DNA of 64,000 bases from IMGVR_UViG_3300042473_001265:276173-340172, one strand, 5' to 3'. Positions 41 through 53,600 are shown, numbered from the stretch's first letter. The notes: generated by a model from the sequence alone, not told the origin. Numbers and translations are program-made.

Positions 41-289
41 ATGCAAAAGAAAACTAGAAGTTTGTTAGAAGAACTCGATTCAATGTACGTTGAGCGTGAC
101 AACCGCCATGTGATTGAAAACCGTGCCAGTAACATCATAGCCAGTGCCATACGCCTGCTAGAGCAGATTGACTCCATTTACGAGCCCGAAACTGCTAAGA
201 ATTTACAACGCAAATTGCTCAATGCCATCAACCTGCGTGACCCAGGCAAATTTACCAGAACCGTGAGAAAAACTGATGCAAATTCATGA
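41..289 (+). CDS. Hypothetical phage protein (82 aa)
   Basis: Late-promoter-like GATAAATA at 11-18; ORF overlaps start of next gene. Confidence 0.7.
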
Positions 290-1829
290 ACTGAGTCGTA
301 GACGCCGCACAGACGAAGGTGTCTTTGACGTCGTTAAAGGTATCGGTAAGGCCGCAGGTTCTGCTCTCGGGGCTGCCACCGGCGTCACCAATCCCAATGC
401 ACAAGCAGCCTCTGCAGGAATTCTTGACCCTGCAAAAAAATTAGACGCAGTAAGAAAAAACAAGGACATGCAGAGAGTTGCTGCACAACTGGCCGCAGGA
501 TGGACTGCAGAAGCAACAAAACTAACTAAGGCACCAGCAGCTGGTGCAGCACCACTGCCCGAAGCAGTGGGCACATACAATAAAAAAACTGGCGCAGCAA
601 ATTTAGATGGTAAAACAATGACTTCATTGTCAGACTTGCCGCCTGCAATACAGCAACAGATACAAGCAAAACAACAAGCTGCTGTACCAGGCAGCGATGC
701 TACACCAACATCTGCAGAACAAGATGCAGCCGATGCAAGAGTTGCAGCTTCTGGTGCAAGTCCCGAAGAAGTTGCAAAGCAACGAGCAGCTAGAGAACAA
801 ACAATAGCAGCCAGAACTTCGCGTACTGCACCAACGGTCAAAACAGCTGATCCATCCGTTGATCCAAGATTAAATCCAACTGCTAATCCAAGATTAAATC
901 CAACTGCTAATCCGGCGATAAATCCAACTGCTAATCCGGCGATAAATCCAACTGCTAATCCGGCGATAAATCCAACTGCTAATCCGGCTGCCGCAACAAC
1001 AACACCAACTAAACCTGGCGCACCACCGGGATTCAATGCTGCCAATGTAATGAAGATGCCAGGCATGCAGCCGGCTGGTAAGAAACCTGCACCTGCCTCT
1101 GCTGCAACGACACCCAAGCCCGGTGCCCCTCCTGGATTCAATGCTGCCAATGTGATGAAGATGCCGGGCATGCCCGGACAACCTGCAACACCCGGGTCAA
1201 TAACACCCGGAGCAGCAGGAGGTGGTGCTGGACAGCCCGACGCAGTAACACCGCCTGCTGACCCGGCAGAAAAAGAATATTGGAACAAGTTTTTAGCATA
1301 TGTAAATAAAAAAACCGCCATTAGAGATGCCAGCACTTATCAAATGATCGGGCTAGATCAAATTCAAAAGCAATCTGGATATAAAAATGAACTTGAAGCA
1401 GCCAAAGCCAAAATTTTACAAGCATACAAAGCCGGGCAAGATGTAACACCAGCAGCCACTGAATATATATTGACAGCAATGGCTGGCGCCCAACTGATAT
1501 CTTCAAAAAATAGGGCCGGCGTGGAACTAGAACAGCCAGAAGTAGATCCAAACGATCCAGACGCTGCCGCAGGAGCCACAGGAGACAACGGTGCTGCCGC
1601 AGGCGGTGCAGCGCCTGGTACTGCGCCCGGTACTGCGCCCACTGCTGGTGGCAGAATTCTTGATACCGCAGGTGTACAAGGGCTATTCAAGTTGAACGGG
1701 GTTGATCCCGCACTGCTACCCAAACTTGGAACTGAATTAAGACGAGCCAGCGGAACCAACGCTGTGACCACAACTGGCAACGGCACAGTTGATAACATGC
1801 TGAAAGCATTGGGATTCAAAGTAACATGA
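276..1829 (+). CDS. Low-complexity Ala/Pro/Gly/Thr-rich protein with internal repeats, possible internal head protein
   Basis: 517 aa ORF, N-terminus MQIHEL...TDEG, tandem repeats, ATGA overlap with next gene. Confidence 0.75.
870..989 (+). repeat. Five tandem 24-nt units encoding (L/I)NPTANP(R/A)
   Basis: Units [t/a]taaatccaactgctaatcc[a/g]nnn start at 870, 894, 918, 942 and 966, in frame with the 276 ORF. Confidence 0.95.
994..1175 (+). repeat. Duplicated peptide block TP(T)[19 protein letters not shown]
   Basis: Two copies in the translation; DNA copies differ mainly at synonymous positions; ends approximate. Confidence 0.9.
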
Positions 1830-3694
1830 TATTAAAAGAAGGCGGCAATGTATTTAAAGATCAGAATGGTCGCATTCTGACTCAACGCATCAATCAAACA
1901 GACGTGAATCCCACCTTGGCCTGGTTGGAAATGCTGCTGCCGGGCCTGGATCTACAAAACAACAAACTGGGCTCAACTGGGCTAAAACCCACATCCGGTG
2001 ACTTGGATATAGCAGTGGATGCCAATGTTGTCAGCAAAGACCAATTGGCTGCAAAACTGACTCAGTGGGCTCAGAGCCATGGTCTCAAACCCGAAGACTA
2101 TGTGAAACGGTCCGGCATCAGTGTGCATTTTAAAACGCCCATCAATGGAAGACCCACAATGGGCTATGTGCAAACTGACTTTATGTTTTTGACCAATGTG
2201 CCATTCTCCAAGTTTGCGCTGACAGCCGCTGCTGACAGCAAGTACGGCGGATCTGATCGCAATGTGCTGATCAACAGCATAGCCAAAAGCATGGGTTACA
2301 AACTGAATCAAACTTCGGGCATTGCCGACCGCGCAACCAACAAAATTATCACAGATGATCCTGACAAGATTGCCAAGCTGTTGCTGAACAATCGTGCAAC
2401 CAAAGAAGATTTGTACAGTGTAGAAACTATTGTGGCTGCATTGGAACAGGATCCCAAGCGTGATGCCAAGTTGGCAGATGCTAGAGATCACTTTGCTAAA
2501 AAAGGTGTGCCTTTTATGGAAAGCGATGAACCAGTGTACAAAGAATACACCGAAGTGGATTTTCTTGCACGCCTGCGTGATCGTATTGTGAATCAAGGCA
2601 TGCAGGTCATTGTGGAAGGTGCAAAGGATGCCAGAATTGAACACTTAGAAGATCTAGTGTTTGAAAAAGGAACCCGGGGCATTCGTGAAGCAGTGGACAT
2701 CATGCGACATGCTGCTGAAAATACTAGAGCAACTACCACTGTCAAGTGGGATGGAAAGCCCGCCATTATATTTGGACGCAAGCCTGACGGCACATTTGTG
2801 CTCACAGACAAAAGCGGATTCAGTGCCAAAGGCTACGACGGCTTGGCCACATCACCGGAGCATATTCAACAAATAATGGCCCTGCGCAAAGGTGACAGAA
2901 CTGAACTGGTAGCTATCTATCAAAAGTTATTTCCTCTGTTACGGGCTGCCACTCCGGAAAACATGCGCGGCTATGTGCAAGGCGATCTGTTGTACACCAA
3001 CACTCCGCCCGAAGTTGCTGGCGCATTTGTGTTCCAACCAAACTTTGTTGAATACAAGATACCTGCTGGTAGTCAGCTGGGGCAGCGTATTGCTGCCAGC
3101 GAAGTGGGTGTTGCAATTCACACCAGATACAAAGATCCTGACAGTTCGCCTACTGCAATTAAAAACATCGCACTGGATCCTGTTCCAGGATTGTTGTTGA
3201 TTGAACCCAGTGTCAAAGACATTCAAAATATCGAACTCAATACTCAGTTGGTCAAGCAACTGAGTCAAATCATTTCTGTTCACGGCAAAGACATTGATGG
3301 ATTGTTCAATCCTGCGGACCTTCGTTCAGCTGGTATCACTGACTTACCACAGTTATGCAAACGCTATATCAATTCTAGAATTACCAGCAACTACGACAAC
3401 CTGCTGAATGGCTTTGGTGACTGGTTGCAGGCCAATGTGACACCACGCAAATTCAACAACATTGTGGAATATTTACAAAGCCCGCGATCCAACACCGACG
3501 GCATTACCGCAGCATTCGCAGCGTTCATGTTGTTGCACGATATCAAAACTGACATGTTGACACAGTTGGATCGTCAGCAGCCAGGCCAGGAAGGCTGGGT
3601 ACTAGCAACACCAGCAGGCCGCGCCAAACTGGTGAATAGATTTGGATTCAGTGCAGGAAACCGTGCTCTAAACAACCCAGAACAAGCAGCCTAA
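1826..3694 (+). CDS. Fusion of a pol-beta-type nucleotidyltransferase-like domain and a KWDG-motif ligase-like domain
   Basis: GSTG...SGDLDIAVD motif at N-terminus; RIEHLEDL...[13 protein letters not shown]...VLTDKSGF in C-terminal half. Confidence 0.65.
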
Positions 3695-3715
3695 CCGGTA
3701 ATTTTTCTCCAAATA

Positions 3716-3723
3716 CATAAATA
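3716..3723 (+). promoter_or_regulatory. T4-like late promoter CATAAATA
   Basis: Close to the TATAAATA consensus; upstream of SD AGGAGA and ATG 3766. Confidence 0.65.
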
Positions 3724-3765
3724 AAAGTAGGTCAACCAAGACCACATACTTTAGGAGATTTTAAA

Positions 3766-4143
3766 ATGGCAAATATCACAACAGCAACGAACGGCACATA
3801 CCAACCAGTATCCAACATGGACTCTGGAACAGTAGCATCTTCACCAGGTGCTGGTTATCCAACACCGTTAAACAGCGCAACCAGTGCTGTCACAGTTAAC
3901 TTGGCTGGTCCAAAGTTAGACTTCTTCACAATCACTTTGGCAAGTTTGGCCACTAGTGGCGCAGTTTTGAATGCATGTATGCTTGCCATTCAAACCAAGG
4001 CCACTATTGCCATGTACGAAGTCACTGACGCTGGTACAGATACACTGGCTATTGCTGTGTATCCCACAGGCGCTTGGACCACTGCTACACTAGACACTGC
4101 CACTGGCGGTAGTACAGCAGCCACTGCAACATTCACAAACTAA
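3766..4143 (+). CDS. Small Ala/Thr-rich protein, probable virion structural component
   Basis: Own late promoter, strong SD and downstream terminator. Confidence 0.7.
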   Translation: MANITTATNGTYQPVSNMDSGTVASSPGAGYPTPLNSATSAVTVNLAGPKLDFFTITLASLATSGAVLNACMLAIQTKATIAMYEVTDAGTDTLAIAVYPTGAWTTATLDTATGGSTAATATFTN

Positions 4144-4162
4144 GCAATTAGTTTTTGATACA

Positions 4163-4195
4163 AAAACCCTGGATTAAAACCCAGGGTTTTCTTTT
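4163..4195 (+). terminator. Intrinsic terminator
   Basis: Perfect stem AAAACCCTGG/CCAGGGTTTT followed by a T-rich tract. Confidence 0.85.
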
Positions 4196-4213
4196 GGCGT
4201 TAAATACTTCATT

Positions 4214-4468
4214 ATGATGGTGAGCAAGATTACCGAAGTGACGATATTTGAAAGTCCAGATGGCGGCCGGACAGTGTATGCACGTCACCCAGGCGCACAG
4301 AATCGGTCACTGCATTATCAAGATCCCAAACTAAAACAAGAACTAGATGAATTAGAACACAAGCGCCGCTGGGCAGAAATATTTGAATCCCGGCACAACA
4401 ATGTAGCACTCAATGAACTGTGCAGTAAAGTTGAAGTGCTGTATGAATTGAGTAAAAAGAACAAATGA
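4214..4468 (+). CDS. Hypothetical protein
   Basis: 84 aa ORF just after TTAAATA; ATGA overlap with next gene. Confidence 0.7.
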   Translation: MMVSKITEVTIFESPDGGRTVYARHPGAQNRSLHYQDPKLKQELDELEHKRRWAEIFESRHNNVALNELCSKVEVLYELSKKNK

Positions 4469-4905
4469 AATATGCAGTACAAACTTTCTTTGACATAACA
4501 GCCACTGGAATTACAGGACATTTTAAACCGTCAAGGATTCCGTTTCGCGACAATGCAGGAAATATGATAACCGATGCAGAATCCTGGAATCGTGCTAGAA
4601 ATCAACAACGCAACTGGGAAACCGTAACACAGATTCTTGGACTAAGAACTCAGCTGTTCCGCCTGCAAGATCCCATAGTAGACACATCACGCAGTGCATG
4701 GATGTTTGAATTCGAAACAGAATCTGACAACATATACGGCAATGATGTTGATCCCACCAGCATATTGAGAGCCGATGCGGATGGTGTGCCCATGCTGACC
4801 GGACTGGATAACAAGCACGAATTGGCATCGACCATTGTCACTCAGGGCCCGGCTCAGAATATTTGGTTTGTTCCGGTCTCCATAAATAGATCAACGGAGA
4901 CTTAA
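4465..4905 (+). CDS. Hypothetical protein
   Basis: 146 aa ORF in a translationally coupled run. Confidence 0.7.
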   Translation: MKYAVQTFFDITATGITGHFKPSRIPFRDNAGNMITDAESWNRARNQQRNWETVTQILGLRTQLFRLQDPIVDTSRSAWMFEFETESDNIYGNDVDPTSILRADADGVPMLTGLDNKHELASTIVTQGPAQNIWFVPVSINRSTET

Positions 4906-5169
4906 ATGGTTGATACTACCAATATTGAAAAGAAAAGTTTAGAAGCACATGTGGAACTGTGTGCTGAACGCTACAGTGCGTTGGAATCAAGATTGGATAA
5001 TGTAGATTCTAAAATTTCTCAGCTTGAAAAAATCATTTGTGAAGTGCGCGACATGGTACAGTCCATGGCCGAAAAACGCAATGATCAATTGATCAACTGG
5101 GGCATAGGTACCATTGGTACACTAGTTGCTGTGGTTGGGTACCTTATTACACAATACGTTCTTAAATGA
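4906..5169 (+). CDS. Coiled-coil protein with C-terminal transmembrane helix
   Basis: Heptad-rich N-terminus, hydrophobic WGIGTIGTLVAVVGYLI; late promoter CATAAATA 4881-4888 and SD GGAG. Confidence 0.7.
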   Translation: MVDTTNIEKKSLEAHVELCAERYSALESRLDNVDSKISQLEKIICEVRDMVQSMAEKRNDQLINWGIGTIGTLVAVVGYLITQYVLK

Positions 5170-5663
5170 CCCTAGACACACAATTTGAACGCCTGTTTAA
5201 AACTGAGTTTGCGGCGCTACAGTCCAACAGTCTTTGGAAAAATGATGCTGGAGAATACCAAGTATTTGGGCGTTATCGCATTGTGAAAGAATCAGCAGGC
5301 TACAGAGTATACTGTTCTCTAACTGAAGTTGGGCTTTTTCACAGCACAAGAGCAGCACTGAGCTGGTGTATTGCCGACAAGTTTGCGCGGTATAACACAG
5401 CCAGGGATATACTACAGCTGGACAATAATTTACATTTTTTAACAGTGGATATCAACACCAGAGCTGCCCTGGGTGATCGTGCAAAAACTGCTGATCAGCA
5501 TGAAATTATACTGACCAAGCTGGAAAGTAAAATTATACAGAAAAAAGAGATAGAAAATAGGTTAGACATTTGTGTCAACTGGGCTAAATATTATCAACAA
5601 CAAGGATTCGACAATGAAACTGCAAGACCTGGCCGTGCTGCCACAAACAAAACAAATCGCTAA
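5166..5663 (+). CDS. Hypothetical protein
   Basis: 165 aa ORF, ATGA overlap. Confidence 0.7.
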   Translation: MTLDTQFERLFKTEFAALQSNSLWKNDAGEYQVFGRYRIVKESAGYRVYCSLTEVGLFHSTRAALSWCIADKFARYNTARDILQLDNNLHFLTVDINTRAALGDRAKTADQHEIILTKLESKIIQKKEIENRLDICVNWAKYYQQQGFDNETARPGRAATNKTNR

Positions 5664-6483
5664 AGTATTCGAAAGTTACTTTGGTAATACCATTACCTTT
5701 GAATCAATTTCCAAGCGCCATGCACATGCCATGTTGGGCCGAGTACGCAGCTTGATAAGCGAGCACCGTGCCACCACTTCCTATCATGGCAGTGAAAAAA
5801 GCCCAGCCTACTTAAAGTTGGTAATGATGGAACAAGTGCTGACCAAGAAACTTCGTGAAGAATTTCCAAGCACTGATGGCACTGCTGCGGTTGATCCAGC
5901 CAAGACCAAACAGGCCCTGGCCAAAATTCAAGATCCCAAACTCAAAGCTGCCATGACCAAAAGCGCAGCCGGACAGACACTTTCACCAGACGAACAAAAA
6001 CTTGTGCAAGGTGCAGCACTGCAAGCAGTGGCCGCAGAAAGCCGTCGTAGAACTGGTCGCCGTTTGAGTGAAAGCGAAGTGCAACAAGCTCAGGTTATCC
6101 TGGCCAGTCAAGACATGGTTGACCAAGTACAGAAGATGATTGAACAGGTCACTTCGTTACAATTTAAAGATTTGCCTGCGTTGGTAGATCAGATTCGCAA
6201 TGAAATTGGCTACGAGCAAGCAACAAAATTCAATGCCGACGCAACTGCTGCACTGGGCGGCATGGTTCAAAACTTGCAGGGCTCCAAAACACAATTGGAA
6301 GCTGCAATGGGCACAGTCACTGGTCAAGCTCCAGTAATACCCGGCGGCGATGTAGCTGCTGAATTACCAGTTGATCCAATGGCTGATCCAATGGCTGCTG
6401 CGCCAGCAGATGATTTAGACATCGATGTTGATGCAGACATTGAAGAACCAGTTTCGGCTGGTCTAGGTCGCGATCGCAGATAA
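5614..6483 (+). CDS. Hypothetical helical protein with acidic tail, possible head assembly/internal protein
   Basis: Start moved to ATG 5614 (SD AAGGA, late motif CTAAATA near 5584); L-x-E motifs (VFES, LSES). Confidence 0.65.
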   Translation: MKLQDLAVLPQTKQIAKVFESYFGNTITFESISKRHAHAMLGRVRSLISEHRATTSYHGSEKSPAYLKLVMMEQVLTKKLREEFPSTDGTAAVDPAKTKQALAKIQDPKLKAAMTKSAAGQTLSPDEQKLVQGAALQAVAAESRRRTGRRLSESEVQQAQVILASQDMVDQVQKMIEQVTSLQFKDLPALVDQIRNEIGYEQATKFNADATAALGGMVQNLQGSKTQLEAAMGTVTGQAPVIPGGDVAAELPVDPMADPMAAAPADDLDIDVDADIEEPVSAGLGRDRR

Positions 6484-6824
6484 TGCGTTTACGAGAGTTC
6501 GCTGAAGATCAAGCTGATGGTCAAAAACTTGCGGCATTGGCCACCTTTCTCAGCGACCGAGCCAATGACGAAGCAGCAGCAAAACAAATTAGCAAAAAAA
6601 CATTCATCGAACTTGCCCGCTCTGTGGGTGTCAATGTAAACGACACCAATCTCAATGACATGGTTGCTGCTGAACCACTCAGCAACATCCTCAACCCAAT
6701 TGATACTGGTTCAGACATAATCAGTTTCAAAGGCGACACAGAAGCTGCCACCGGCATGAGTGTTGATCAAGCTCAAGAAGTGGTCAACAGCAATGCCAAG
6801 TCGGCAATGAAACGCCGTCAGTAA
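6483..6824 (+). CDS. Hypothetical protein with MRLREFAE leader
   Basis: 113 aa ORF, TAATG overlap. Confidence 0.7.
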   Translation: MRLREFAEDQADGQKLAALATFLSDRANDEAAAKQISKKTFIELARSVGVNVNDTNLNDMVAAEPLSNILNPIDTGSDIISFKGDTEAATGMSVDQAQEVVNSNAKSAMKRRQ

Positions 6825-6949: not shown

Positions 6950-7153
6950 ATGGCATCAGGTAAAGTAAAATGGTTTAATGAAACCAAAGGTTTTGGGTTT
7001 ATTACTCCAGACGCAGGCGGAGAAGAACTGTTCGCACACTACACAGCAATTCAAACAGATGGATTCAAGGTCCTCAAAGAAAATCAGCGTGTATCTTACG
7101 ATGTAGTTCAAGGACAAAAAGGCCTGCAAGCATCTAACATTGTGCCACAGTAA
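6950..7153 (+). CDS. cspA: Cold-shock protein (CSD)
   Basis: [15 protein letters not shown] (RNP1) and LFAHY (RNP2); 67 aa. Confidence 0.97.
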
Positions 7154-7162
7154 ATCGCAACA

Positions 7163-7185
7163 GGCCGGGTTACTCCGGCTTTTTT
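7163..7185 (+). terminator. Intrinsic terminator after cspA
   Basis: GCCGG/CCGGC stem followed by TTTTTT. Confidence 0.8.
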
Positions 7186-7209
7186 ATCAAATTATAAAAC
7201 AATCAACAT

Positions 7210-7593
7210 ATGGCCTATTCAGAAAAAGTAGTTGATCATTATGAGAACCCAAGAAATGTAGGCAGCTTTGCCAAAGAAGATGGTGATGTCGGCACAGGCA
7301 TGGTCGGGGCTCCGGCCTGCGGCGATGTGATGAAGCTGCAAATCAAAGTCACCGACGGAGTAATCACAGATGCAAGATTTAAAACATACGGTTGCGGCAG
7401 CGCGATTGCGTCAAGTTCGCTTGTTACTGAATGGGTCAAAGGACTCACCCTTGAGCAGGCGGAAACGATCAAAAATAGCGAAATTGCTACTGAGCTTGCC
7501 CTTCCCCCTGTTAAAATTCATTGTTCAATACTTGCAGAAGATGCCATCAAAGCGGCGGTAGCTGACTATAGAATCAAGCATCCAGCGCAATGA
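7210..7593 (+). CDS. iscU: Fe-S cluster scaffold IscU
   Basis: YSEKVVDHYENPRNVG, GAPACGDVM, GCGSAIASSS, LPPVKIHCS. Confidence 0.97.
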   Translation: MAYSEKVVDHYENPRNVGSFAKEDGDVGTGMVGAPACGDVMKLQIKVTDGVITDARFKTYGCGSAIASSSLVTEWVKGLTLEQAETIKNSEIATELALPPVKIHCSILAEDAIKAAVADYRIKHPAQ

Positions 7594-7913
7594 TCGAAGT
7601 CACTGACACTGCTGCTAAAAAAATTAAAAAAAGTTTAGCCGCTCGCGGTCGCGGTGAAGGCATCCAAATTGGTGTACGAACCACTGGTTGTTCGGGACTT
7701 GCTTATGTGTTAGAATATGTAGACAATCCCAATTTGCATTGTGTACGACATTACGATTCAAATGGTGTACGGGTGTTCATTGATCCCAAACACCTGCCGT
7801 ACTTGGATGGCATGATAGTAGATTTCAAAAGGAACGGCCTCAACGAAGGTTTTGAGTTTATCAACAAAAACGAGCGCGACCGCTGCGGTTGCGGAGAATC
7901 ATTCAGAGTTTAG
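7590..7913 (+). CDS. iscA: A-type Fe-S carrier IscA
   Basis: TTGCSGLAY and C-terminal CGCGESF. Confidence 0.95.
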   Translation: MIEVTDTAAKKIKKSLAARGRGEGIQIGVRTTGCSGLAYVLEYVDNPNLHCVRHYDSNGVRVFIDPKHLPYLDGMIVDFKRNGLNEGFEFINKNERDRCGCGESFRV

Positions 7914-14636: not shown

Positions 14637-15134
14637 ATGAAAATAAATGAACTGTTAGAAAGTGCAGATGACATAGAGTTCAAGGCAAAAACTCTTGCTG
14701 TTGATGCACACAAGAACCAAAAATACGGTGTACACCCTTATGTCACTCATTTGGCGGATGTTGTTGCCCGTGTTAAAACAATTACACAAGACCCGGAAAT
14801 AATTGCTGCTGCTTGGTTGCATGATATAGTGGAAGATACAGATGTTACCTTAGAACAAATCAAACAACAATTTGGTGATAATGTTGCCAATATAGTTTGG
14901 GCAGTGACAGGACGCGGAGAGAACCGAAAAGAAAAAATGGCAAATGCCATTGCCAAGATTGCTCAAACTCCGGGAAGTGAATTGGTAAAGAGTGCAGACC
15001 GATTGAGCAATGTTTCTGCCAGTTTAGCAAACAATCCAAAAAAACTTAAAATGTACCGAGATGAACACAAGGATTTGAGTCCAGTCTTGGGCAATAATGC
15101 ATTGGCTTTAGAGCTAGTGGATTTATTTAAATAA
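14637..15134 (+). CDS. Stand-alone RelA/SpoT-type HD hydrolase (small alarmone hydrolase-like)
   Basis: PYVTH, AAWLHDIVEDT, VKSADRLSN; leader MKINELLES. Confidence 0.85.
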   Translation: MKINELLESADDIEFKAKTLAVDAHKNQKYGVHPYVTHLADVVARVKTITQDPEIIAAAWLHDIVEDTDVTLEQIKQQFGDNVANIVWAVTGRGENRKEKMANAIAKIAQTPGSELVKSADRLSNVSASLANNPKKLKMYRDEHKDLSPVLGNNALALELVDLFK

Positions 15135-20672: not shown

Positions 20673-20948
20673 ATGAATATCCAAGAAATCAACACTGCCA
20701 TCATTCAAGGCCCATTTACCAACGATCAGCTGACCAGCATTGTAGACGCAGTGCGATTTGCTCGTAGTCAACTCACTCGCCGCAACACTGGATCCTTTGT
20801 GATTGGTACTCGCGTCAAGTTTCACAATCGTAAAACTGGTGTGACCTATACCGGAACAGTCAACAAGGTCAAGCTGAAGAATATTCTGGTCGACACCGAT
20901 GTTGGTGTTCGATACAATGTTCCGGCTGCCATGTTGGAAACAGTATAA
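20673..20948 (+). CDS. Hypothetical protein with SH3-like C-terminus
   Basis: Start moved to ATG 20673 after SD AAGGAG; IGTRVKF...GTVNKV. Confidence 0.7.
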   Translation: MNIQEINTAIIQGPFTNDQLTSIVDAVRFARSQLTRRNTGSFVIGTRVKFHNRKTGVTYTGTVNKVKLKNILVDTDVGVRYNVPAAMLETV

Positions 20949-28043: not shown

Positions 28044-29252
28044 ATGACCATCAGATCAACACCCACGCATTGCAGTTTTTGTGACAAGCACAAGGATCAA
28101 GTCGTCAAACTGATTGTGGGGCACAATGTAGGCATATGCAACGAGTGTGTTGATTTTTGTCACGGGCTACTGATAAAAGAACAGGCCAAAACAAAAAACG
28201 TCACAGAAGAATCAATTTTAGATCCACGAGCAATACACAAATATCTTGATCAGTATGTGATTGGTCAACCAACTGCTAAAATTGTGTTGAGTGTGGCTGT
28301 GGCCAATCATTACAAGCGCATCAGTGATACAGGTCTAGAACAAGAAATACAAAAAGCCAATATCTTAATAACAGGACCAACCGGCACAGGCAAAACACTG
28401 ATGGCCCGTACTGTGGCCAAATATTTAGATGTTCCTTTTGTCATTGCAGATGCAACCACATTGACCGAAGCAGGTTATGTGGGTGATGATGTTGACAGTT
28501 TGATCACACGGTTATATCATGCCAGTGGAAATGATGTGGAACGCACACAGCGCGGTATTATATTCCTAGACGAAGTAGACAAAATAGCCCGCAAAAGCGA
28601 AAGCGCCACGGTAACACGGGACATATCCGGCGAGGGTGTGCAGCAAGCACTGCTCAAACTGATCGAAGGTACCAAGTGCAAAGTGGCCCAGCAAAATAGT
28701 CGCAAGGTCTCAACAGGTGAAACAGTTGACATCGACACTACCAACATCCTGTTTATCTGTGGTGGAGCTTTTGTTGGGCTAGACAAAGTTATCAAAACCC
28801 GCACACACGGAACTGCCATTGGATTTGGTGCAAAGTTAACAGTGCCAAACAACGCCACAACAGAAGCAATCACTCCAGACGATCTAGTACGCTACGGAAT
28901 GATACCGGAGTTTGTGGGAAGATTTCCCAGCATTATACAACTGGACGAGCTGACCAAACCACAACTTATTACCATTCTTACCGAAGTAAAAAACAACCTG
29001 GTTGGTCAGTACAGATGGTTGTTTAACCAAGATGGGGTAGCATTGGACTTTGATACCGACAGTTTAGATCTAATTGCTGAACGCACAATGGTCACAAAAA
29101 CTGGTGCTCGTGGACTGCATACAGAACTAGAGCGTGTGTTGTTGCCGCATATGTACAACTTGAAAGATTATCAGTCACGCAATGTGCTAAAAATTGCCAT
29201 TGACAAAACACAAGTCACAACGCCTCTTAAATTAGAACAACAAAATTCTTAA
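28044..29252 (+). CDS. clpX: ATP-dependent Clp protease ATP-binding subunit ClpX
   Basis: Zn finger CSFC...CNEC, Walker A GPTGTGKT, Walker B IFLDEVDK, IGF loop, GARGL. Confidence 0.95.
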   Translation: MTIRSTPTHCSFCDKHKDQVVKLIVGHNVGICNECVDFCHGLLIKEQAKTKNVTEESILDPRAIHKYLDQYVIGQPTAKIVLSVAVANHYKRISDTGLEQEIQKANILITGPTGTGKTLMARTVAKYLDVPFVIADATTLTEAGYVGDDVDSLITRLYHASGNDVERTQRGIIFLDEVDKIARKSESATVTRDISGEGVQQALLKLIEGTKCKVAQQNSRKVSTGETVDIDTTNILFICGGAFVGLDKVIKTRTHGTAIGFGAKLTVPNNATTEAITPDDLVRYGMIPEFVGRFPSIIQLDELTKPQLITILTEVKNNLVGQYRWLFNQDGVALDFDTDSLDLIAERTMVTKTGARGLHTELERVLLPHMYNLKDYQSRNVLKIAIDKTQVTTPLKLEQQNS

Positions 29253-29353: not shown

Positions 29354-29812
29354 ATGACAAAAACTCTCACCCTTCGCTCTTTCGACATTCCTGCAATTCA
29401 CAAATTTGGCATCGGATTCGACAACATGTTTGATGATCTCATGCGTGTGAGTGCTCAACAATCTACCACAAATTATCCACCTTATGATATTGTACAAATC
29501 AACGAAGATGAGTACATGATTGCTGTGGCTGTGGCCGGATTTGGCGACGACAATCTTTCAGTGATCAAGGACAAAAAAGTTTTGGTCATTGAAGGTAAGC
29601 ACAGCCGTGAAACTGTGGACAATGAAGATTCTACTGCAAAATATCTGCACAAAGGCATCAGTGAAAGACATTTCCGCAGGGAATTTCAGTTGGCTGATCA
29701 TGTGGAAATTGTCAATGCAAATCTTGAACTGGGCATCTTGAGCATACACCTAAAGCGTGATATTCCTGAAGAAGCCAAGCCAAAGACCATTGCAATCAAC
29801 TACAAAAAGTAA
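29354..29812 (+). CDS. Small heat-shock protein Hsp20 (IbpA-like)
   Basis: NYPPYDIV, AVAGF, YLHKGISERHFRREFQL, LGILSIHL. Confidence 0.93.
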   Translation: MTKTLTLRSFDIPAIHKFGIGFDNMFDDLMRVSAQQSTTNYPPYDIVQINEDEYMIAVAVAGFGDDNLSVIKDKKVLVIEGKHSRETVDNEDSTAKYLHKGISERHFRREFQLADHVEIVNANLELGILSIHLKRDIPEEAKPKTIAINYKK

Positions 29813-29873: not shown

Positions 29874-30188
29874 ATGACATCACCAGATATCAATACATTA
29901 ATCAAATCAAAAGTAGAACTGCGTGAACCACCAATGTTTAAGATCATCTACTTGAACGACACCAAGACATCTGTAGATTTTGTAGTTGAAAGTTTAATCA
30001 CACACTTTGAATACACAGCAGACACTGCTGTCGCCATCACTGAAGATATCCATAATTCTGGATCCGCAGTGGTAGCAGTATTGCCCTACGAAATTGCTGA
30101 ACAAAAAGGCATCGAAGTCACTGTGGATGCTCGCAATCATAATTTTCCATTGCAGATCAAGCTGGAACCTGAAACAGTTGTGCATTGA
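29874..30188 (+). CDS. clpS: ClpS adaptor-like protein
   Basis: PPMFKIIYLND...FVVESL, IHNSGSAVV, EIAEQK, FPLQIKLE; start moved to ATG 29874. Confidence 0.85.
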   Translation: MTSPDINTLIKSKVELREPPMFKIIYLNDTKTSVDFVVESLITHFEYTADTAVAITEDIHNSGSAVVAVLPYEIAEQKGIEVTVDARNHNFPLQIKLEPETVVH

Positions 30189-48185: not shown

Positions 48186-48338
48186 TTTGTCCTAACTAGA
48201 ACTTTTTGAAGAGATAGATCAGCAAAAATTGCTGCGTTGCACAAAAATCATAAATAAGTGTGTTATAATAACAACCATAGGATGCCGCAATAAGGCGGGT
48301 CTTATTTTCAGTAAACTCGCTTAAATTAGGAGAAAATT

Positions 48339-48620
48339 ATGTTTACAACCGACTCATTCGTGGACACCGTCCAAACAGCCAAAAAAACCTGGATCAAAAC
48401 TTTCATCACAAACAATCACATTGCCGAGTCAATGAATCATTTTGTTGACAGTCAAGCTGACTACACCAAAAAAGCATTCAAAGCAACCACTGATGCTGCA
48501 CAAGAAATTGCTGCTGAAACAGTCAAAGCTGCACAGGCTGCTGCCAAGTTTGACTATTCCAAATTTGGTGAAGGTATCATGAAGGCCTACTCTGCTCAAA
48601 GCACAGCCAAAGCCAAGTAA
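48339..48620 (+). CDS. Ala-rich amphipathic helical protein, phasin-like
   Basis: SD AGGAGA; late and extended -10 promoter motifs upstream. Confidence 0.6.
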   Translation: MFTTDSFVDTVQTAKKTWIKTFITNNHIAESMNHFVDSQADYTKKAFKATTDAAQEIAAETVKAAQAAAKFDYSKFGEGIMKAYSAQSTAKAK

Positions 48621-48638
48621 TATCCAGTTCAAAACCGC

Positions 48639-48688
48639 TTGACCAATGGATCCAGTTCGTGTACACTAGGTGCATGAACTGGATTTTT
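48639..48688 (+). repeat. Terminator-promoter element, copy 1
   Basis: TTGACC-17 nt-TACACT inside a hairpin ATCCAGTTC...GAACTGGAT followed by a T-run; 45/50 identical to 49511-49560. Confidence 0.85.
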
Positions 48689-48723
48689 TCTTGAGTGTAC
48701 ACAAACAAACAAATGGAGTCGAT

Positions 48724-49473: not shown

Positions 49474-49510
49474 CAACAGCAACACAATTGACCATTTGGG
49501 TTGCCTGCAC

Positions 49511-49560
49511 TTGACCAATTAATCCAGTTCGTGTACACTAGATACATGAGCTGGATTTTT
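49511..49560 (+). repeat. Terminator-promoter element, copy 2
   Basis: Direct repeat of 48639-48688. Confidence 0.85.
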
Positions 49561-49637
49561 TTGGATTTACACAAACCAATTCTGGTTGACCAATCAAGTT
49601 CAGTGGTAATACACCATCAACATTTAAGGGTATTGAA

Positions 49638-50324
49638 ATGAAACATCGTATTTTAACTGCTGTGGCATTGGCTGCTGCTATGATGACCACAGGATGCAGC
49701 AACAATCCGCTCAAACCCGGCAGCGGCGCAGACCCCGGTGCCAGTGCTACCACTGCCATCAGTGAACAAGTGGCAGTGAACGACTTTACCCGCATCGGAG
49801 TGCGTATCAAATATAAATTGATCACAGGTGAGCTTGAAAGCATTGAAGCCACTGGATATGCTCCAGTCTGGGGCAACAGTGCATCCGCAGTGCGAGAATC
49901 ATTCCGTGTGGCCGAACTCGAAGCCAAGAAAAGTCTTAACGATTTTATCAATCGTGAAAACATCACCAGCAGCACTTCGGTCAAAATGATCAGTCATAAT
50001 CTGGAGCAGGCCACAGACAACAAGAAAAACAACTTTGTAAGCAATGTGGTCAAGTCCACTGACGAGTTTGCCGAAGTTGAAACGGCTGTCAATCCCAATC
50101 GTATCAACAACAACGAAACCAACACTGCTGTACGCAATGACGCATTGAAAATTGCCAGCACTGTGAACAACACAATCACTGTGAAAGCTTCGGGTATCCT
50201 GGGCGGGCTGTACCTGGTCGAAGGTAAAGTGATCAACAGCGGCAAAACTGTAATGACCGTCTATCGCTGGGACGCTCGGAGCAATGCTGTTCGTCCCACT
50301 GTGCGTTCTGCAATGATGCAGTAA
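49638..50324 (+). CDS. Lipoprotein (LPP20-like)
   Basis: Signal with lipobox TTGC; AELEAKKSL helix. Confidence 0.7.
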   Translation: MKHRILTAVALAAAMMTTGCSNNPLKPGSGADPGASATTAISEQVAVNDFTRIGVRIKYKLITGELESIEATGYAPVWGNSASAVRESFRVAELEAKKSLNDFINRENITSSTSVKMISHNLEQATDNKKNNFVSNVVKSTDEFAEVETAVNPNRINNNETNTAVRNDALKIASTVNNTITVKASGILGGLYLVEGKVINSGKTVMTVYRWDARSNAVRPTVRSAMMQ

Positions 50325-50325
50325 C

Positions 50326-51390
50326 ATGTTCAAGCGTTTACTGCTGGCCATCAGCACTGCCACAGTGCTGACAACTGCTCATGCTGATGTGCTTTCTATA
50401 TTTTTACCAACGCCGTGGACTGTGGGCATTGGGTTAGTTCGATGGCTGGCTGAAGGCCAAGAAAAAATTCTTTATGTAGAAGTTGTTGGCGAAGGCGCCA
50501 CTGTGGATCAAGCAAGACAACAGGGATTTGCACTGGCGGTGGAACATGCTGTGGGCACTGTGATTGTGAGCGAAACTGCTGTGCGCAACAGTCGTATAGT
50601 ACGGGACGAGATCATCACCTACTCTTCGGGCTATGTGGATCGATTTGAAATTGTCAAACAACAGCAGGCGGGCAATAGAGTTCAGGTCAGTATGAAAATA
50701 TGGGTCAAGCACAGCAAGTTGGCCAATAGATTGTTGAACCAATCTGAAACAGCCGGCACCATCGACGGTGGGCGTATCAGCGCACAGATACAGTCTCTGC
50801 AACGAGAACGAGTGTCCGGCGATCGATTGTTGCAATCTGTGCTAGCAGACTATCCACGCAGAGCGTTTGATATTGAATTGGCACCGACTCGAGTATTTTT
50901 CGATGCCAACAGAAATGGACAGTTGGAAGTGGCATTTCATCTGTCCTGGAACAAGTTGTACATTGACAGCATAGCCGAAGCTGTTGCTGCAATAAATCAA
51001 AGACCCGACTGCGGTAGATTTCCCGGCTGTACCAATGTGACTTCGGAAGTGACTGTTAAACGGCGTGGATTTGGATCCACCACCACAGCATATTTTGATG
51101 ATCGCAATGCACAGGAATTGATACGAAAAGAAATGGTGCAAAGCCAGCCCACCGTTCGTGTGGCCATTATGGATGTGAACGGCAATGAACAGTTCAAACA
51201 GTGCTTTTATGCCAAAGAACTGGATTATCGCGAGTACGCGGCCTGGTATTATGTAACGCTGGACCACAACAAAGTGTCCATAAACGGCCAGGCCAGCAAG
51301 AGATTCAGCACATTGATCAATCTTGGTTCTGTGCCGGCAAACCGGCTGGACAAAGTGGAAATATCCCTGGTTCGCGGACCTGGTTGTTAA
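50326..51390 (+). CDS. Secreted hypothetical protein
   Basis: Signal peptide ending AHA; GEGAT...ARQQGFALAVE pattern. Confidence 0.7.
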   Translation: MFKRLLLAISTATVLTTAHADVLSIFLPTPWTVGIGLVRWLAEGQEKILYVEVVGEGATVDQARQQGFALAVEHAVGTVIVSETAVRNSRIVRDEIITYSSGYVDRFEIVKQQQAGNRVQVSMKIWVKHSKLANRLLNQSETAGTIDGGRISAQIQSLQRERVSGDRLLQSVLADYPRRAFDIELAPTRVFFDANRNGQLEVAFHLSWNKLYIDSIAEAVAAINQRPDCGRFPGCTNVTSEVTVKRRGFGSTTTAYFDDRNAQELIRKEMVQSQPTVRVAIMDVNGNEQFKQCFYAKELDYREYAAWYYVTLDHNKVSINGQASKRFSTLINLGSVPANRLDKVEISLVRGPGC

Positions 51391-51483
51391 TTTGGATTAT
51401 GGCACAATAGTGCCATAAGTAGTTGTGTACCAATTTGGTTAGCTGTACAATGCTAACTACTATAACTTTAATTAGATCACATC

Positions 51484-52059
51484 ATGGCAAACCAAACAGA
51501 TACAGAATTCAACAAAGACCACACACAGGCCTTGGCCGACATAGGCATGTATGTGCTGATGGGAGAAATCAATGCTGAAACAGTCAAACCGGTGATTGAA
51601 TGGATTTTACACGAAAACTTTGTGTCCAAGAAAAAACGCAAAGAACTCTTGTTGATGATCTGTAGTGAGGGCGGCGATGTACAAGATGCATTTGCCTTGA
51701 TTGATGTGATGCGCAGCAGTCTTATTCCTGTAAAGACAGTGGGCTTGGGAATGATTGCCAGTTCGGGACTGTTGATTTTTCTTGCTGGCAGTGCTGGACG
51801 CCGTGTGTTGACTCCAAACACTTCGATACTGAGTCATCAATTCTCTTGGTACAACGAAGGCAAGGTTCATGAGTTATTTGCCACTATGAAAGAGTTTGAA
51901 CTGACTCAACACCGTATGGTCAAGCACTATCAAGAATGCACTGGGCTTGATGAAGAAAACATTCGTAAAAATTTACTACCACCACATGATGTATGGCTCA
52001 CTGCCGAAGATGCATTAAGACTCCGCATCTGCGATAGCATTTCAATACTTCAGCGCTGA
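51484..52059 (+). CDS. clpP: Divergent ClpP-like protease
   Basis: ICSEGGDV, IASSG (Ser), SHQF (His), DVWLTAEDAL. Confidence 0.85.
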   Translation: MANQTDTEFNKDHTQALADIGMYVLMGEINAETVKPVIEWILHENFVSKKKRKELLLMICSEGGDVQDAFALIDVMRSSLIPVKTVGLGMIASSGLLIFLAGSAGRRVLTPNTSILSHQFSWYNEGKVHELFATMKEFELTQHRMVKHYQECTGLDEENIRKNLLPPHDVWLTAEDALRLRICDSISILQR

Positions 52060-53600
52060 CGTTTACGGCCAAACATTGGCACATTATCTCTCGGAGGTTT
52101 CACAACTTCTGTCTCGTCTTCGTCGCCGCCGGCTCTAGCAGTAACTCTTGAGCGTTTTTGTGTCACTGCATCTAGGTCGGCAGCATTTAGATTTGCAGGT
52201 TCTTGCCCAGTCCCAGCGGCATCCGCATCATACGGTTCCATACTGGGTTCAGACCTGGCACCTTTGGGTTTGAGTTTGAAACTGAATCCGCCTTTGGTAG
52301 GGTTAACGCCGCCAGATTTTGATTCTATAGTAACTTCGCCATCAAGTTTTGCAGGCCATTGAGTGTTGAAAATCAGCGTGTTGCCAGATGCTGTGGTATA
52401 CTGCTGAATGAAATTGTAATCCAACACTTCCAGCACAACAGCTTGAAATTCAGGGACTGCTCCGCTGTTCACAATGTTCATCACAGCAGCTTTGGTCACA
52501 TAGGTAAGTTTTCCACCGTCACTGCCTTTGCTGTCTAACTTGGCAAACAGTGGCTCGTACTTGGGCATGGCTGTGCCATTTTTTAAACTGTCTGACACCT
52601 GGGCCACAATATCTTTTGACCAAGGAAGGAATGGTTGAAAGTCTGCAGGGATCGCGTCAGGTCCCAACCGCTGGTTCAACAAATTCATGACCTGGAACAC
52701 TTGACTCACAGTCCATGGCTTGGGTAAATTTTCGTTTTGACACAGCTCAATCAAATCAATTGCTGTTTGGTATTGAGTCTTTGAACGCAGATGATCAGGA
52801 ATCTTTAAGCTGCTCACACTGGGTGCAGCGCCGCCGCCGGTGCCCTTGCTGCTGATGTTTAGTGTGTGTGCATTTTCTGGATTGGTAACTGAAGCAAAAC
52901 TGTCAGCAATGGGATTATTTTGTTCACTGGGAAAGCTCAATACCAGGCTCATCATATCTGTGCCCAACCAGGCTAAAAACTGGTCACGCGATGCAAATTT
53001 GGATTGATTGTAGACCAATGCCAGCACACCAAGATATTCCCCTGCGTAATCCACAATGGCTTTTTTTAGCTTGTCGTTTTTGCGAATTTCGTCAGGCATC
53101 ACAGCAGGATTGCCAGCCATGATATTCTGTGCCATGACGATGACTGCTTGTCCGTATTCAGTTGATTGTAGCACTGGATTATTCACAATGGCCGCACCAA
53201 ACTCATCTGCTGGAATGGCCTGATCAGTAATACCAATCTGTGCTGGTTTGACCAATACACCTTCTTTGCTGGTCTGCCCAGGTGCTTGCGCTCCGGGCTT
53301 GGCGCTGCTGCCACCAAATTCAGCAGTTTTTCTAAAGTTCGAAAGCGGCCATTGTTTTCCATCGGCGTCGACTGCTTTGATGCTGCCTTGGAATTCGCCG
53401 GCTGCTTTCATCTTTAAGAATCTGTCAGCTTCGGCGGGAGCCAACACAACTTCGGCGCCTTCTTTTTCGGTATAGAATGGCCGTTTATTTTGAATGTGCG
53501 CAATAAATGCGTCAAAGCGTTCGGGATACTTGGTGATCTCACCCGGGCTCAGAGTTGCTTCCTGAAGCAAATCATCTAGTATGTTGATTAAATCTCTCAT
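52050..53600 (-). CDS. Large hypothetical protein with LLQEA leader, possible head-packaged protein
   Basis: 516 aa; late motif GATAAGTA 4 nt upstream. Confidence 0.7.
   Translation of the reverse strand: MRDLINILDDLLQEATLSPGEITKYPERFDAFIAHIQNKRPFYTEKEGAEVVLAPAEADRFLKMKAAGEFQGSIKAVDADGKQWPLSNFRKTAEFGGSSAKPGAQAPGQTSKEGVLVKPAQIGITDQAIPADEFGAAIVNNPVLQSTEYGQAVIVMAQNIMAGNPAVMPDEIRKNDKLKKAIVDYAGEYLGVLALVYNQSKFASRDQFLAWLGTDMMSLVLSFPSEQNNPIADSFASVTNPENAHTLNISSKGTGGGAAPSVSSLKIPDHLRSKTQYQTAIDLIELCQNENLPKPWTVSQVFQVMNLLNQRLGPDAIPADFQPFLPWSKDIVAQVSDSLKNGTAMPKYEPLFAKLDSKGSDGGKLTYVTKAAVMNIVNSGAVPEFQAVVLEVLDYNFIQQYTTASGNTLIFNTQWPAKLDGEVTIESKSGGVNPTKGGFSFKLKPKGARSEPSMEPYDADAAGTGQEPANLNAADLDAVTQKRSRVTARAGGDEDETEVVKPPRDNVPMFGRKRQR

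What the first reader, a model, noticed from the sequence alone, without database searches (positions are those of the whole stretch)
276..53600. Shared head-protease-type N-terminal leaders on unrelated proteins
Several unrelated ORFs begin with a short leader ending in (I/L)-x-E: MQIHE (276), MILKE|GG (1826), MRLRE|FAE (6483), MKINE|LLE|SA (14637, HD hydrolase) and MRDLINILDDLLQE|AT (53600, minus). In T4, internal proteins carry short capsid-targeting leaders removed by the gp21 protease after Glu in (I/L)-x-E (established). Inference: these are packaged and injected enzymes acting before phage transcription.
Basis: partly seen in the sequence, partly recalled or inferred. Interest (0 to 1): 0.65.

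Follow-up and report, generated by a model that had tools for sequence, protein, structure and literature searches.

The report
Capsid-targeting-like leaders on jumbo-phage proteins
A 340-kb phage related to Pseudomonas phage PA5oct puts a short shared N-terminal tag, resembling the T4 signal that loads proteins into the capsid, on several unrelated proteins including an alarmone-degrading enzyme; the tag is statistically real, but packaging and cleavage are still inferred.

Summary
The five N-termini are in the sequence exactly as described. It gives 10 genes against 4.8 expected in this genome. In T4 itself, 45 of 257 called genes meet it, among them lysozyme, Dda and ligase.

A sharper leader is hidden inside the pattern: M-[KRNQ]-[AIL]-x-[E/D]-[LIF] at residues 1-6. 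In 13 of 23 cases a hydrophobic-x-E site follows, ending at residue 8-10. This genome has 13 such genes against 0.9 expected. The excess replicates in PA5oct (8 vs 0.9; 5 of the 8 were detected in virions by mass spectrometry) and in phage Phosso (2 vs 0.1). It is absent from T4 and XbC2.

The genome encodes a T4 gp21-type prohead protease. Three flagged genes (276, 6483 and the HD hydrolase at 14637) carry the refined leader. The gene at 52050 has its own conserved helix plus a hydrophobic-x-E|ATL site. The gene at 1826 has a five-residue add-on.

Genes 41-6824 sit behind late-promoter-like motifs and are syntenic with a block of PA5oct virion proteins.

Verdict: partly supported. This is probably a clade-specific variant of the T4 capsid-targeting sequence. 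Cleavage after residue 5, injection and early action are untested.

The parts
12..18 (+). Late-promoter-like motif ATAAATA, 29 nt upstream of the gene at 41
   Evidence: The 7-mer lies within 100 nt upstream of 30 genes against 2.6 expected. Genes with it directly upstream are enriched for homologs of PA5oct virion proteins (11/35 vs 35/380, p 5e-4). Coordinates.
41..289 (+). 82-aa protein starting [10 protein letters not shown]|E, first gene of a late-type operon
   Evidence: phrog_11854 'virion structural protein', E 7e-16. Homolog of PA5oct gp259. N-terminus identical in 10 relatives.
276..1829 (+). 517-aa low-complexity Pro/Ala-rich protein carrying the refined leader MQIHEL
   Evidence: The N-terminus MQIHEL(S/N)R.RR..EG is conserved in 11 relatives that are only 48-77% identical over the aligned N-terminal segments. 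Its first 14 nt overlap the 3' end of gene 41-289, which may account for part of that conservation. No Pfam, PHROG or NCBIfam hit. Repeats seen.
1826..3694 (+). 622-aa two-domain protein (N-terminal nucleotidyltransferase-like domain plus DUF6267) starting MILKE|GGNVFKD
   Evidence: DUF6267, E 1e-37. The N-terminal domain resembles PA5oct gp253, which was detected in virions by MS. The PA5oct and Phosso homologs start MSGNAFGQ and MGGAAFKD, so MILKE is a clade-specific add-on. It does not fit the refined leader.
3717..3723 (+). Late-promoter-like motif upstream of 3766
4214..4468 (+). 84-aa protein with ITE and IFE in its first 13 residues
   Evidence: Relatives have GTA at position 4238, so the start is the upstream ATG (corrected).
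4882..4888 (+). Late-promoter-like motif upstream of 4906, heading the operon 4906-6824
5614..6483 (+). 289-aa protein with leader MKLQDL (MKLQEL in relatives)
   Evidence: phrog_14154 'virion structural protein'. Homolog of PA5oct gp247, detected in virions by MS. D/E interchange at residue 5.
6483..6824 (+). 113-aa protein with leader MRLREFAE|D
   Evidence: Positional counterpart of PA5oct gp246 (MKIKDILVE|S, detected by MS) and of the Phosso 132-aa protein (MRLSEIINE|S). All three directly follow the 5614 homolog. Leader conserved in relatives.
14637..15134 (+). 165-aa RelA/SpoT-type HD hydrolase (small-alarmone-hydrolase-like) with leader MKINELLE|SA, lying between nrdA and nrdB
   Evidence: HD_4, E 1e-14. 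PDB relatives are Rel, Mesh1, small alarmone hydrolases and a (p)ppApp hydrolase. In 56 orthologs: K2 in 44, E5 in 50 (D in 6), aliphatic residue 6 in 55 of 56, E8 in 33, S9 in 32. In the AF2 model residues 1-10 have mean pLDDT 53, the other 10-residue blocks 89-99.
20673..20948 (+).
   Evidence: Strong SD. Lies downstream of an early-type promoter, so its membership is doubtful.
52050..53600 (-). 516-aa conserved clade protein with an N-terminal helix MRDLINILDD, then LQE|ATL, and a basic C-terminal tail
   Evidence: 684 homologs. MRD(L/I)(L/I)(N/D)(L/I)(L/I)D and hydrophobic-x-E|ATL(S/E)P are kept across indels; the tail LGRKRQR is conserved. In the AF2 model residues 7-14 and 455-502 fall below pLDDT 50. 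Fold matches are weak only.
55042..55371 (+). 109-aa protein with leader-like MNATEL directly behind an early-type promoter
   Evidence: It fits the pattern but argues against a strictly late or virion role.

Best explanation
The window is the last 64 kb of a 340-kb jumbo myovirus of the PA5oct, Phosso and XacN1 kind, which builds its head with a T4 gp21-type prohead protease.

A subset of its proteins carries a short N-terminal leader that is a clade-specific variant of the T4 capsid-targeting sequence. Residues 1-6 are M-(K/R/N/Q)-(A/I/L)-x-(E/D)-(L/I/F). This is the inferred targeting part, and it corresponds to T4 MKTYQEF shortened by one residue. In about half the cases a hydrophobic-x-Glu site follows, ending at residue 8-10. 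This is the inferred gp21-type cut, usually before S, A, D or N.

The likely mechanism: the leader docks the protein onto the scaffolding core while the prohead assembles. The protease then removes it, leaving the mature protein inside the capsid to leave with the DNA.

In the window the best candidates are 6483, 5614 and 276 (late operons) and the HD hydrolase at 14637. Gene 52050 has a different but equally conserved propeptide-like N-terminus. MILKE on gene 1826 is the weakest case.

Shown: the motif's excess over chance, its replication in two other genomes, its conservation in orthologs, its flexibility in two structure models, the presence of the protease, the late-promoter context and the synteny. 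Inferred: targeting, cleavage, packaging and injection.
For: - Protease and head module: Peptidase_S77 at genome 197443-197898, E 9e-25. Gene order is portal, 73-aa gp67-like protein, gp68-like protein, protease, scaffold, major capsid protein, as in T4 and PA5oct. The capsid proteins of three phages keep two sites, LLE|G...ALLE|GLNG, LFE|S...ALTE|GLKG and LTE|S...KLVE|GLNG.
- Enrichment: 13 vs 0.9 here, 8 vs 0.9 in PA5oct, 2 vs 0.1 in Phosso. No excess after internal Met residues.
- Codons of the leader differ between genes, so the constraint is on the protein.
- Second site: hydrophobic-x-E ending at residue 8-10 in 13 of 23 leader proteins against 5.6% of the others (odds ratio 22, p 2e-10).
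- PA5oct: 5 of 8 leader proteins are ESI-MS/MS virion proteins (odds ratio 5.3, p 0.024). One is gp333, the gp67-like core protein.
- Orthologs keep the leader. The g61465 family reads MRA(Q/H)EF(I/V)AEA, nearly the T4 core QEFIAE|A. The g62991 family keeps (I/L)-x-E|(S/A). The g65051 family keeps hydrophobic-x-E|(N/D/S)AS. HD and 52050 orthologs.
- A scan with the T4 CTS puts g234527 (MRAREFIAE) and g231338 (MKHFREYLLE; late motif upstream, homolog of an MS-detected PA5oct protein) on top.
- The leaders are low-confidence appendages in the AF2 models.
- T4 precedent: targeting depends on CTS residues 4 and 7, processing on 8 and 10. Unrelated internal proteins share only the CTS (PMC9026906; PMC3012670).
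Against: - No proteomic or N-terminal data exist for this uncultivated phage.
- The refined pattern was defined after seeing this genome.
- The PA5oct virion list also contains RNR, ThyA, ligase, FtsH and UvsX, so it is not strictly virion-specific. The association rests on 8 proteins.
- XbC2 has the same head module but no excess of the leader.
- Leader genes are not significantly concentrated in late-type operons (odds ratios 1.4-2.1, not significant). Genes 20673, 55042 and g74306 follow early-type promoters.
- The HD gene is embedded in the nrdA-nrdB unit.
- Seven of the 13 leader proteins here lack a second site at residues 8-10.
- In g74306 orthologs residue 5 varies (E, D, S, G). In g56241 the conserved N-terminus runs straight into a domain. 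Some hits are therefore ordinary N-terminal helices.
Confidence: 0.55

Rival explanations
1. Generic N-terminal bias plus chance. M-(K/R/N)-(I/L)-x-E-(L/I/F) is simply how many N-terminal amphipathic helices begin, helped by A/T-rich early codons. The five proteins would then share nothing functional.
For:
- T4 proteins known not to be processed, such as lysozyme MNIFEML, carry it.
- K, N, I and E are somewhat over-represented at residues 2-7 of this proteome.
- XbC2 and T4 show no excess.
- There is no significant link with late operons.
Against: - The refined pattern is 14-fold over positional expectation here and 9-fold in PA5oct, with no excess after internal Met residues.
- It is coupled to a second hydrophobic-x-E site (p 2e-10).
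- It is conserved in orthologs where the neighbouring sequence diverges.
- Codons vary between genes.
- Only some genomes show it, which a universal bias would not predict.
Confidence: 0.2
2. The leader is a real signal but for another machine. Candidates are recognition by the phage's own Clp/FtsH-type proteolysis or chaperone set, or a cut after residue 5 that exposes L, F or I as an N-degron. It would then control protein lifetime, not packaging.
For: - The window encodes two ClpP-like proteins. By eye it also encodes ClpX-, ClpS- and Hsp20-like genes.
- PA5oct annotates ClpX, ClpA, ClpS and ClpP-like genes.
- Residue 6 is always L, I or F.
- Some leader genes follow early-type promoters.
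Against: - XbC2 also has ClpA and ClpP but no excess of the leader.
- The gp67-like prohead core protein itself carries the leader.
- PA5oct leader proteins are found in virions.
- The leader resembles the T4 CTS down to EFIAE.
- No test of Clp recognition was possible.
Confidence: 0.12
3. One reading: all five proteins are cut after (I/L)-x-E at residue 5 (residue 14 for 52050) and act as injected enzymes before phage transcription.
For: - A gp21-type protease is present.
- MILKE|GG would leave the same N-terminus as the PA5oct and Phosso homologs.
- LQE|ATL in 52050 is conserved.
Against: - Residue 5 is Asp in several family members and residue 3 is often A, M or S. In T4, Asp in place of the cleavage-site Glu (CTS residue 10) blocks processing.
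- A five-residue leader is half the minimal T4 CTS.
- There is no evidence of injection or timing.
- The HD gene lies in the RNR operon.
Confidence: 0.1

Closest known systems
[quoted passage not shown]
   Same: A short N-terminal leader shared by otherwise unrelated proteins in a phage with a gp21-family protease. Hydrophobic residues three apart flank a Glu, and the leader ends in (I/L)-x-E before a small residue. Some family members read MRA(Q/H)EFIAEA (PMC9026906, PMC3012670).
   Different: One residue shorter, with K/R/N/Q at residue 2 and A/I/L at residue 3. Asp is tolerated at the first acidic position. It is found on proteins from 62 to 1447 aa, including a predicted enzyme. Cleavage and packaging have not been shown.
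T4 gp24, gp23, gp67 and gp68 propeptides cut by gp21 at L/I-x-E
   Same: The head-module proteins here and in PA5oct and XbC2 keep N-terminal (I/L)-x-E|(G/S) sites. T4 gp24 starts MAKINELLRE|S, and the HD protein starts MKINELLE|S.
   Different: Those are structural shell and core proteins. The HD protein is a metabolic-type enzyme encoded outside the head module.
phiKZ, 201phi2-1 and SPN3US head and ejection proteins cut at S/A-x-E
   Same: Jumbo phages in which many packaged proteins carry N-terminal propeptides removed after Glu by a diverged gp21 homolog (PMC9026906).
   Different: Different phage lineage, different P3 preference (S/A) and longer propeptides. This genome belongs to the PA5oct/XacN1-type group with a recognisable S77 protease.
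PA5oct virion proteome (93 ESI-MS/MS proteins)
   Same: Syntenic block between the DnaB helicase and exonuclease/RNR genes. Homologs or positional counterparts of 41, the N-terminal domain of 1826, 5614 and 6483 are listed as structural (PMC7318152).
   Different: Only 95 of 415 proteins have a PA5oct homolog. The paper does not mention leaders or processing, and its list includes clearly non-structural enzymes.

Membership tests
T4-type capsid-targeting / prohead-protease propeptide | The phage encodes a gp21-family (Peptidase S77) prohead protease | tested here: met
   PF03420, E 9e-25, 84.9 bits against a cut-off of 27, at genome 197443-197898. 54% identical to the PA5oct head maturation protease.
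T4-type capsid-targeting / prohead-protease propeptide | The same short N-terminal leader on proteins that are otherwise unrelated, beyond chance | tested here: met
   13 vs 0.9 here, 8 vs 0.9 in PA5oct, 2 vs 0.1 in Phosso; no excess after internal Met. None of the position-5 motif proteins (9 of the 13 refined-leader proteins among them) nor gene 52050 resembles any other protein of the genome by blastp. The pattern was refined post hoc on this genome.
T4-type capsid-targeting / prohead-protease propeptide | The leader ends in L/I-x-E followed by the mature protein | tested here: inconclusive
   13 of 23 leader proteins have hydrophobic-x-E ending at residue 8-10 (p 2e-10). Genes 6483 (FAE) and 14637 (LLE) do. 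Genes 276, 5614, 20673 and 55042 do not. Gene 52050 has a conserved hydrophobic-x-E|A site at residue 10-15.
T4-type capsid-targeting / prohead-protease propeptide | Sequence likeness to the T4 CTS MKTYQEFIAE | tested here: inconclusive
   An anchored alignment scan gives 2 hits scoring 20 or more against 0.33 expected (g234527, g231338). Window proteins score lower. Orthologs of g61465 read MRA(Q/H)EFIAEA.
T4-type capsid-targeting / prohead-protease propeptide | The protein is present in virions and the leader is removed by the protease | not testable with these tools
   Indirect evidence only: PA5oct ESI-MS/MS flags (5/91 vs 3/278). The supplementary tables are not held.
RelA/SpoT-type HD hydrolase (small alarmone hydrolase) - gene 14637 | HD_4 domain over the curated cut-off, with conserved His/Asp metal ligands | tested here: met
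   PF13328, 55 bits against a cut-off of 27.2. PDB matches are Rel, Mesh1, small alarmone hydrolases and a (p)ppApp hydrolase, E down to 1e-14. H25, H38, H62, D63 and D121 are invariant in 56 orthologs. AF2 model pLDDT 93.
RelA/SpoT-type HD hydrolase (small alarmone hydrolase) - gene 14637 | Hydrolysis of (p)ppGpp or (p)ppApp | not testable with these tools
   Needs an enzyme assay.
DUF6267 - gene 1826 | Pfam model over the cut-off | tested here: met
   PF19782, 130.5 bits against a cut-off of 27, residues 271-612. Relatives in T4-like cyanophages.

The most novel reading that the evidence does not exclude
PA5oct-like jumbo phages have their own capsid-targeting code, about 8-10 residues of the form M-(K/R)-h-x-E-h-h-x-E| where h is a hydrophobic residue. 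They use it to load a varied cargo into the head: small internal proteins, a large LysM protein, a zinc-ribbon protein, a possibly nuclease-like 516-aa protein, and a (p)ppGpp/(p)ppApp-type alarmone hydrolase. The hydrolase would be injected with the DNA to blunt stringent-response or toxic-alarmone defences before any phage gene is expressed. If true, the ejected proteome of an uncultivated phage could be read from its sequence.
Probability: 0.3. Interest if true: 0.75.

Novelty: new variant of a known kind. Interest (0 to 1): 0.6.

Why it matters
T4 showed that a ten-residue tag is enough to load any protein into a capsid and deliver it into the next host, and that T-even phages use this to carry anti-defence proteins.

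A recognisable, statistically supported variant of that tag in a separate jumbo-phage clade would bring three things:
- a sequence-only way to predict which proteins these phages inject;
- specific candidates, notably an alarmone hydrolase, for first-minute counter-defence;
- a ready-made packaging tag for engineering PA5oct-type therapeutic phages.

The searches of the held library returned no paper whose title or abstract describes such leaders in this phage group. No paper in the held library combined PA5oct, RaK2 or XacN1 with 'propeptide', and the one combining them with 'prohead protease' (PMC7765460) was not read.

The work also gives a caution. The bare (I/L)-x-E rule is far too permissive to be used on its own.

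Tried and rejected
- Megablast of 20 kb against the phage collection found nothing. Distant blastn hit only the RNR genes.
- Peptidase_S78 is absent from the genome.
- Gene 52050 as a T4 Alt relative: no similarity. Foldseek against the PDB found nothing at E <= 0.001. VIA-align gave only Z < 5, with a recurring but unreliable restriction-endonuclease-like theme.
- The T4 late promoter TATAAATA occurs only 5 times in the genome. The working motif is ATAAATA.
- Propagating promoter classes along operons gave no significant link between leader and late class. The classes are crude: 174 genes come out as 'late'.
- My first reading was that the HD leader is simply part of helix 1. I withdrew it after the ortholog profile and the AF2 confidence.
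- g65051 against T4 gp61.1: the similarity covers only a 12-residue segment at the leader (query residues 5-16; E 0.003 for the single comparison), and the two fall in different PHROGs.
- A basic C-terminal tail as a co-signal: only 7 proteins have one, 2 of them with a leader. Too few to judge.
- The genome search 'relatives' is not available for a virus record. The PA5oct supplements are not held.
- XbC2 shows no excess of the leader.
- Not used: read laying, the look-up of sequencing runs, complex prediction, the large representative search, and any non-standard genetic code.


Full report
**What the window is.** The window is the last 64 kb of a single 340,172-bp virus record, with CheckV completeness about 98%. 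It has no near relative in the phage collection. Protein-level links point to the jumbo myoviruses PA5oct, Phosso, XbC2/XacN1, SCTP-2 and a Vibrio phage. The genome encodes a T4 gp21-family prohead protease (Peptidase_S77, E 9e-25) and no S78 protease. The head module has the T4 order: portal, 73-aa gp67-like protein, gp68-like protein, protease, scaffold, major capsid protein. The premise that a gp21-type L/I-x-E protease operates here is therefore reasonable.

**The observation.** All five N-termini are present as written. None of them resembles any other protein of the genome, the other four included, by blastp. I called 415 genes with a simple codon-bias and SD-based caller. On PA5oct it reproduced the annotated start of 86 of 91 checked genes.

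The apparent excesses with Glu at residue 7 and 10 come from one paralog family of small proteins. The looser rule that admitted 52050 is met by 19 of 99 window genes.

As a control I rebuilt T4 from its record. There, 45 of 257 called genes have [IL]xE within the first 12 residues. They include lysozyme e (MNIFEMLRIDE), Dda, gp44, gp62, ligase, UvsY and RNase H, beside the true substrates IPII, IPIII, gp67, gp68, gp21, gp22, gp24 and Alt. The bare rule is therefore not diagnostic.

**A sharper motif.** Listing the hits showed a narrower pattern, M-[KRNQ]-[AIL]-x-[ED]-[LIF].
- It occurs 13 times against 0.9 expected. After internal Met residues it occurs 2 times against 1.8 expected, so the excess belongs to protein starts.
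- I defined it on this genome, so I tested it elsewhere. PA5oct, rebuilt with its 93 ESI-MS/MS flags, has 8 against 0.9 (p 5e-6). A 100-kb sample of Phosso has 2 against 0.1. T4 has 2 against 0.8. A 150-kb sample of XbC2 has 1 against 0.2.
- The codons of the leader differ from gene to gene.
- Leader proteins also tend to have a second site, hydrophobic-x-Glu ending at residue 8-10. This holds for 13 of 23 leader proteins against 5.6% of all others (p 2e-10).
- Examples: MKINELLE|S (HD), MRLREFAE|D (6483), MRAREFIAE|Q, MRAAEFVKE|D, MNINDIITE|S, PA5oct MKINDIITE|G (the gp67-like core protein), MKIKDILVE|S, MRLNEINLIE|T, and Phosso MRLSEIINE|S.

**Link to virions.** In PA5oct, 5 of the 8 leader proteins are on the virion mass-spectrometry list (5/91 vs 3/278, odds ratio 5.3, p 0.024). 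Two of the other three lie inside or beside clusters of detected proteins. That list also contains RNR, ThyA, ligase, FtsH and UvsX (PMC7318152), so it is not a clean virion list.

In this genome a motif ATAAATA lies 11-50 nt upstream of tail, baseplate, portal-side and neck genes. It occurs upstream of 30 genes against 2.6 expected. Genes with it directly upstream are enriched for homologs of PA5oct virion proteins (11/35 vs 35/380, p 5e-4). In the window it precedes 41, 3766 and 4906. Genes 41-6824 therefore look like three late operons.

This block is syntenic with PA5oct gp259-gp245, between the DnaB helicase and the exonuclease and RNR genes, where most products are annotated as structural. 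The protein that follows the 5614 homolog carries the leader in all three phages: 6483 here, gp246 in PA5oct, and a 132-aa protein in Phosso.

**Conservation.**
- Orthologs from IMG/VR keep MQIHEL(S/N)R.RR..EG on a protein that is otherwise 48-77% identical over the aligned N-terminal segments. They also keep [12 protein letters not shown] and MRL(R/C)EF.
- Fifty-six HD orthologs at 61-91% identity keep K2, E5 (50 E, 6 D), an aliphatic residue 6, and mostly E8 and S9. Residue 3 varies: I 24, M 10, S 8, A 4.
- In the AF2 model of the HD protein (pLDDT 93) residues 1-10 average 53. The leader is therefore a low-confidence extension in front of the HD core.
- Families outside the window keep the second site even better. 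One reads MRA(Q/H)EF(I/V)AEA, almost the T4 core QEFIAE|A.
- Gene 52050 has 684 homologs. They share MRD(L/I)(L/I)(N/D)(L/I)(L/I)D, then a spacer of variable length, then hydrophobic-x-E|ATL, and a basic C-terminal tail. Its model shows a detached N-terminal helix and a disordered tail.

**Comparison with T4.** In T4 the first ten residues of IPIII are sufficient for packaging. Residues 4 and 7 matter for targeting and residues 8 and 10 for processing. Asp at residue 10 blocks cutting but not targeting. gp21 cuts after L/I-x-E (PMC9026906). The internal proteins share only the CTS (PMC3012670).

Aligned with a one-residue shift, the conserved positions 3, 5 and 6 of the leader here match T4 Y4, E6 and F7. 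The second site matches T4 I8 to E10. This fits a targeting-plus-cleavage leader of 8-10 residues.

**The five genes, one by one.**
- 6483: good candidate. It has the leader plus a second site, sits in a late operon, and has leader-bearing positional counterparts in two other phages, one of them MS-detected.
- 276: the leader is present and conserved, and the gene is in a late operon, but there is no clear second site. Part of the conservation may come from its 14-nt overlap with gene 41-289.
- 14637 (HD, alarmone-hydrolase-like): the leader fits very well and is conserved and flexible. The gene, however, sits between nrdA and nrdB with no late motif, so packaging is plausible but unsupported by context.
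- 52050: a different but strongly conserved propeptide-like N-terminus. It lies between two ClpP-like genes on the opposite strand, and its function is unknown.
- 1826: MILKE is a five-residue add-on absent from the PA5oct and Phosso homologs, which start at the following Gly/Ser-Gly. This is suggestive, but it does not fit the shared leader.

**What weakens the case.**
- There is no direct proteomics for this phage.
- The pattern was refined post hoc.
- XbC2 shows no excess.
- There is no significant concentration of leader genes in late-type operons.
- Three leader genes lie behind early-type promoters.
- At least two pattern hits (g74306, g56241) look like ordinary N-terminal helices.

Noticed in passing
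window 56152-59269, plus genome 121816-122204: A paralog family of about ten small proteins (58-109 aa) starting MN(E/L/K/Q)RI.(E/Q)LAEQ, mostly in a tandem run. It creates spurious [IL]xE excesses at residues 7 and 10.
   Followed up: partly
window 51547-52059 and 53701-54291; by eye 28044-29252, 29354-29812, 29874-30188: Two ClpP-like genes (27% and 53% identical to PA5oct gp212) flank the minus-strand gene 52050. By eye there are also ClpX-like, Hsp20-like and ClpS-like genes, so the phage may carry its own proteostasis set.
   Followed up: partly
window 1826-3694: The N-terminal domain shows a pol-beta nucleotidyltransferase-like signature (GS...GDLDIAVD). The DUF6267 part contains KWDG, like ligase motif I. 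This may be an NTase-ligase fusion (by eye only).
   Followed up: no
window 276-1829: A 517-aa low-complexity protein with tandem NPTANPAI repeats and a duplicated [19 protein letters not shown] segment.
   Followed up: no
window 12, 3717, 4882, 26281, 29282, 31394, 41943, 48250 (all + strand): Candidate late promoter ATAAATA. Early genes instead show TTGAC plus TGnTATAAT about 39 nt upstream of the start, notably in a run of small genes at 54805-60904.
   Followed up: partly
L032:18966-19130 (T4 gene 61.1): The 54-aa T4 protein gp61.1 starts MKTFKEFIKE. This is the third-best match in T4 to the internal-protein CTS, above IPI itself. I do not know of it being described as packaged.
   Followed up: partly
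genome 65051-65248 (L024:9051-9248); XbC2 214721-214876; Phosso 331487-331684: A small peptide family (51-65 aa) combines a leader with an ASGG..SGSIA-like Gly/Ser motif. In XbC2 and Phosso it lies in the block after the primase-helicase genes.
   Followed up: partly
window 52050-53600: The AF2 model (pLDDT 78) gives only weak matches (Z 3-4.8). They recur among PD-(D/E)xK nucleases: I-Ssp6803I, HhaI, MspI, EcoRV, Hjc. The C-terminal tail LGRKRQR is conserved in homologs.
   Followed up: partly
window 6950-7913: By eye, a CspA-like gene (6950-7153) and IscU-like and IscA-like genes (7210-7913) follow the late block.
   Followed up: no
genome 66378-70778 (L024:10378-14778): A 1466-aa protein starts MILNELY, the same seven residues as the 73-aa gp67-like core protein at genome 196309. 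It carries a LysM domain.
   Followed up: partly
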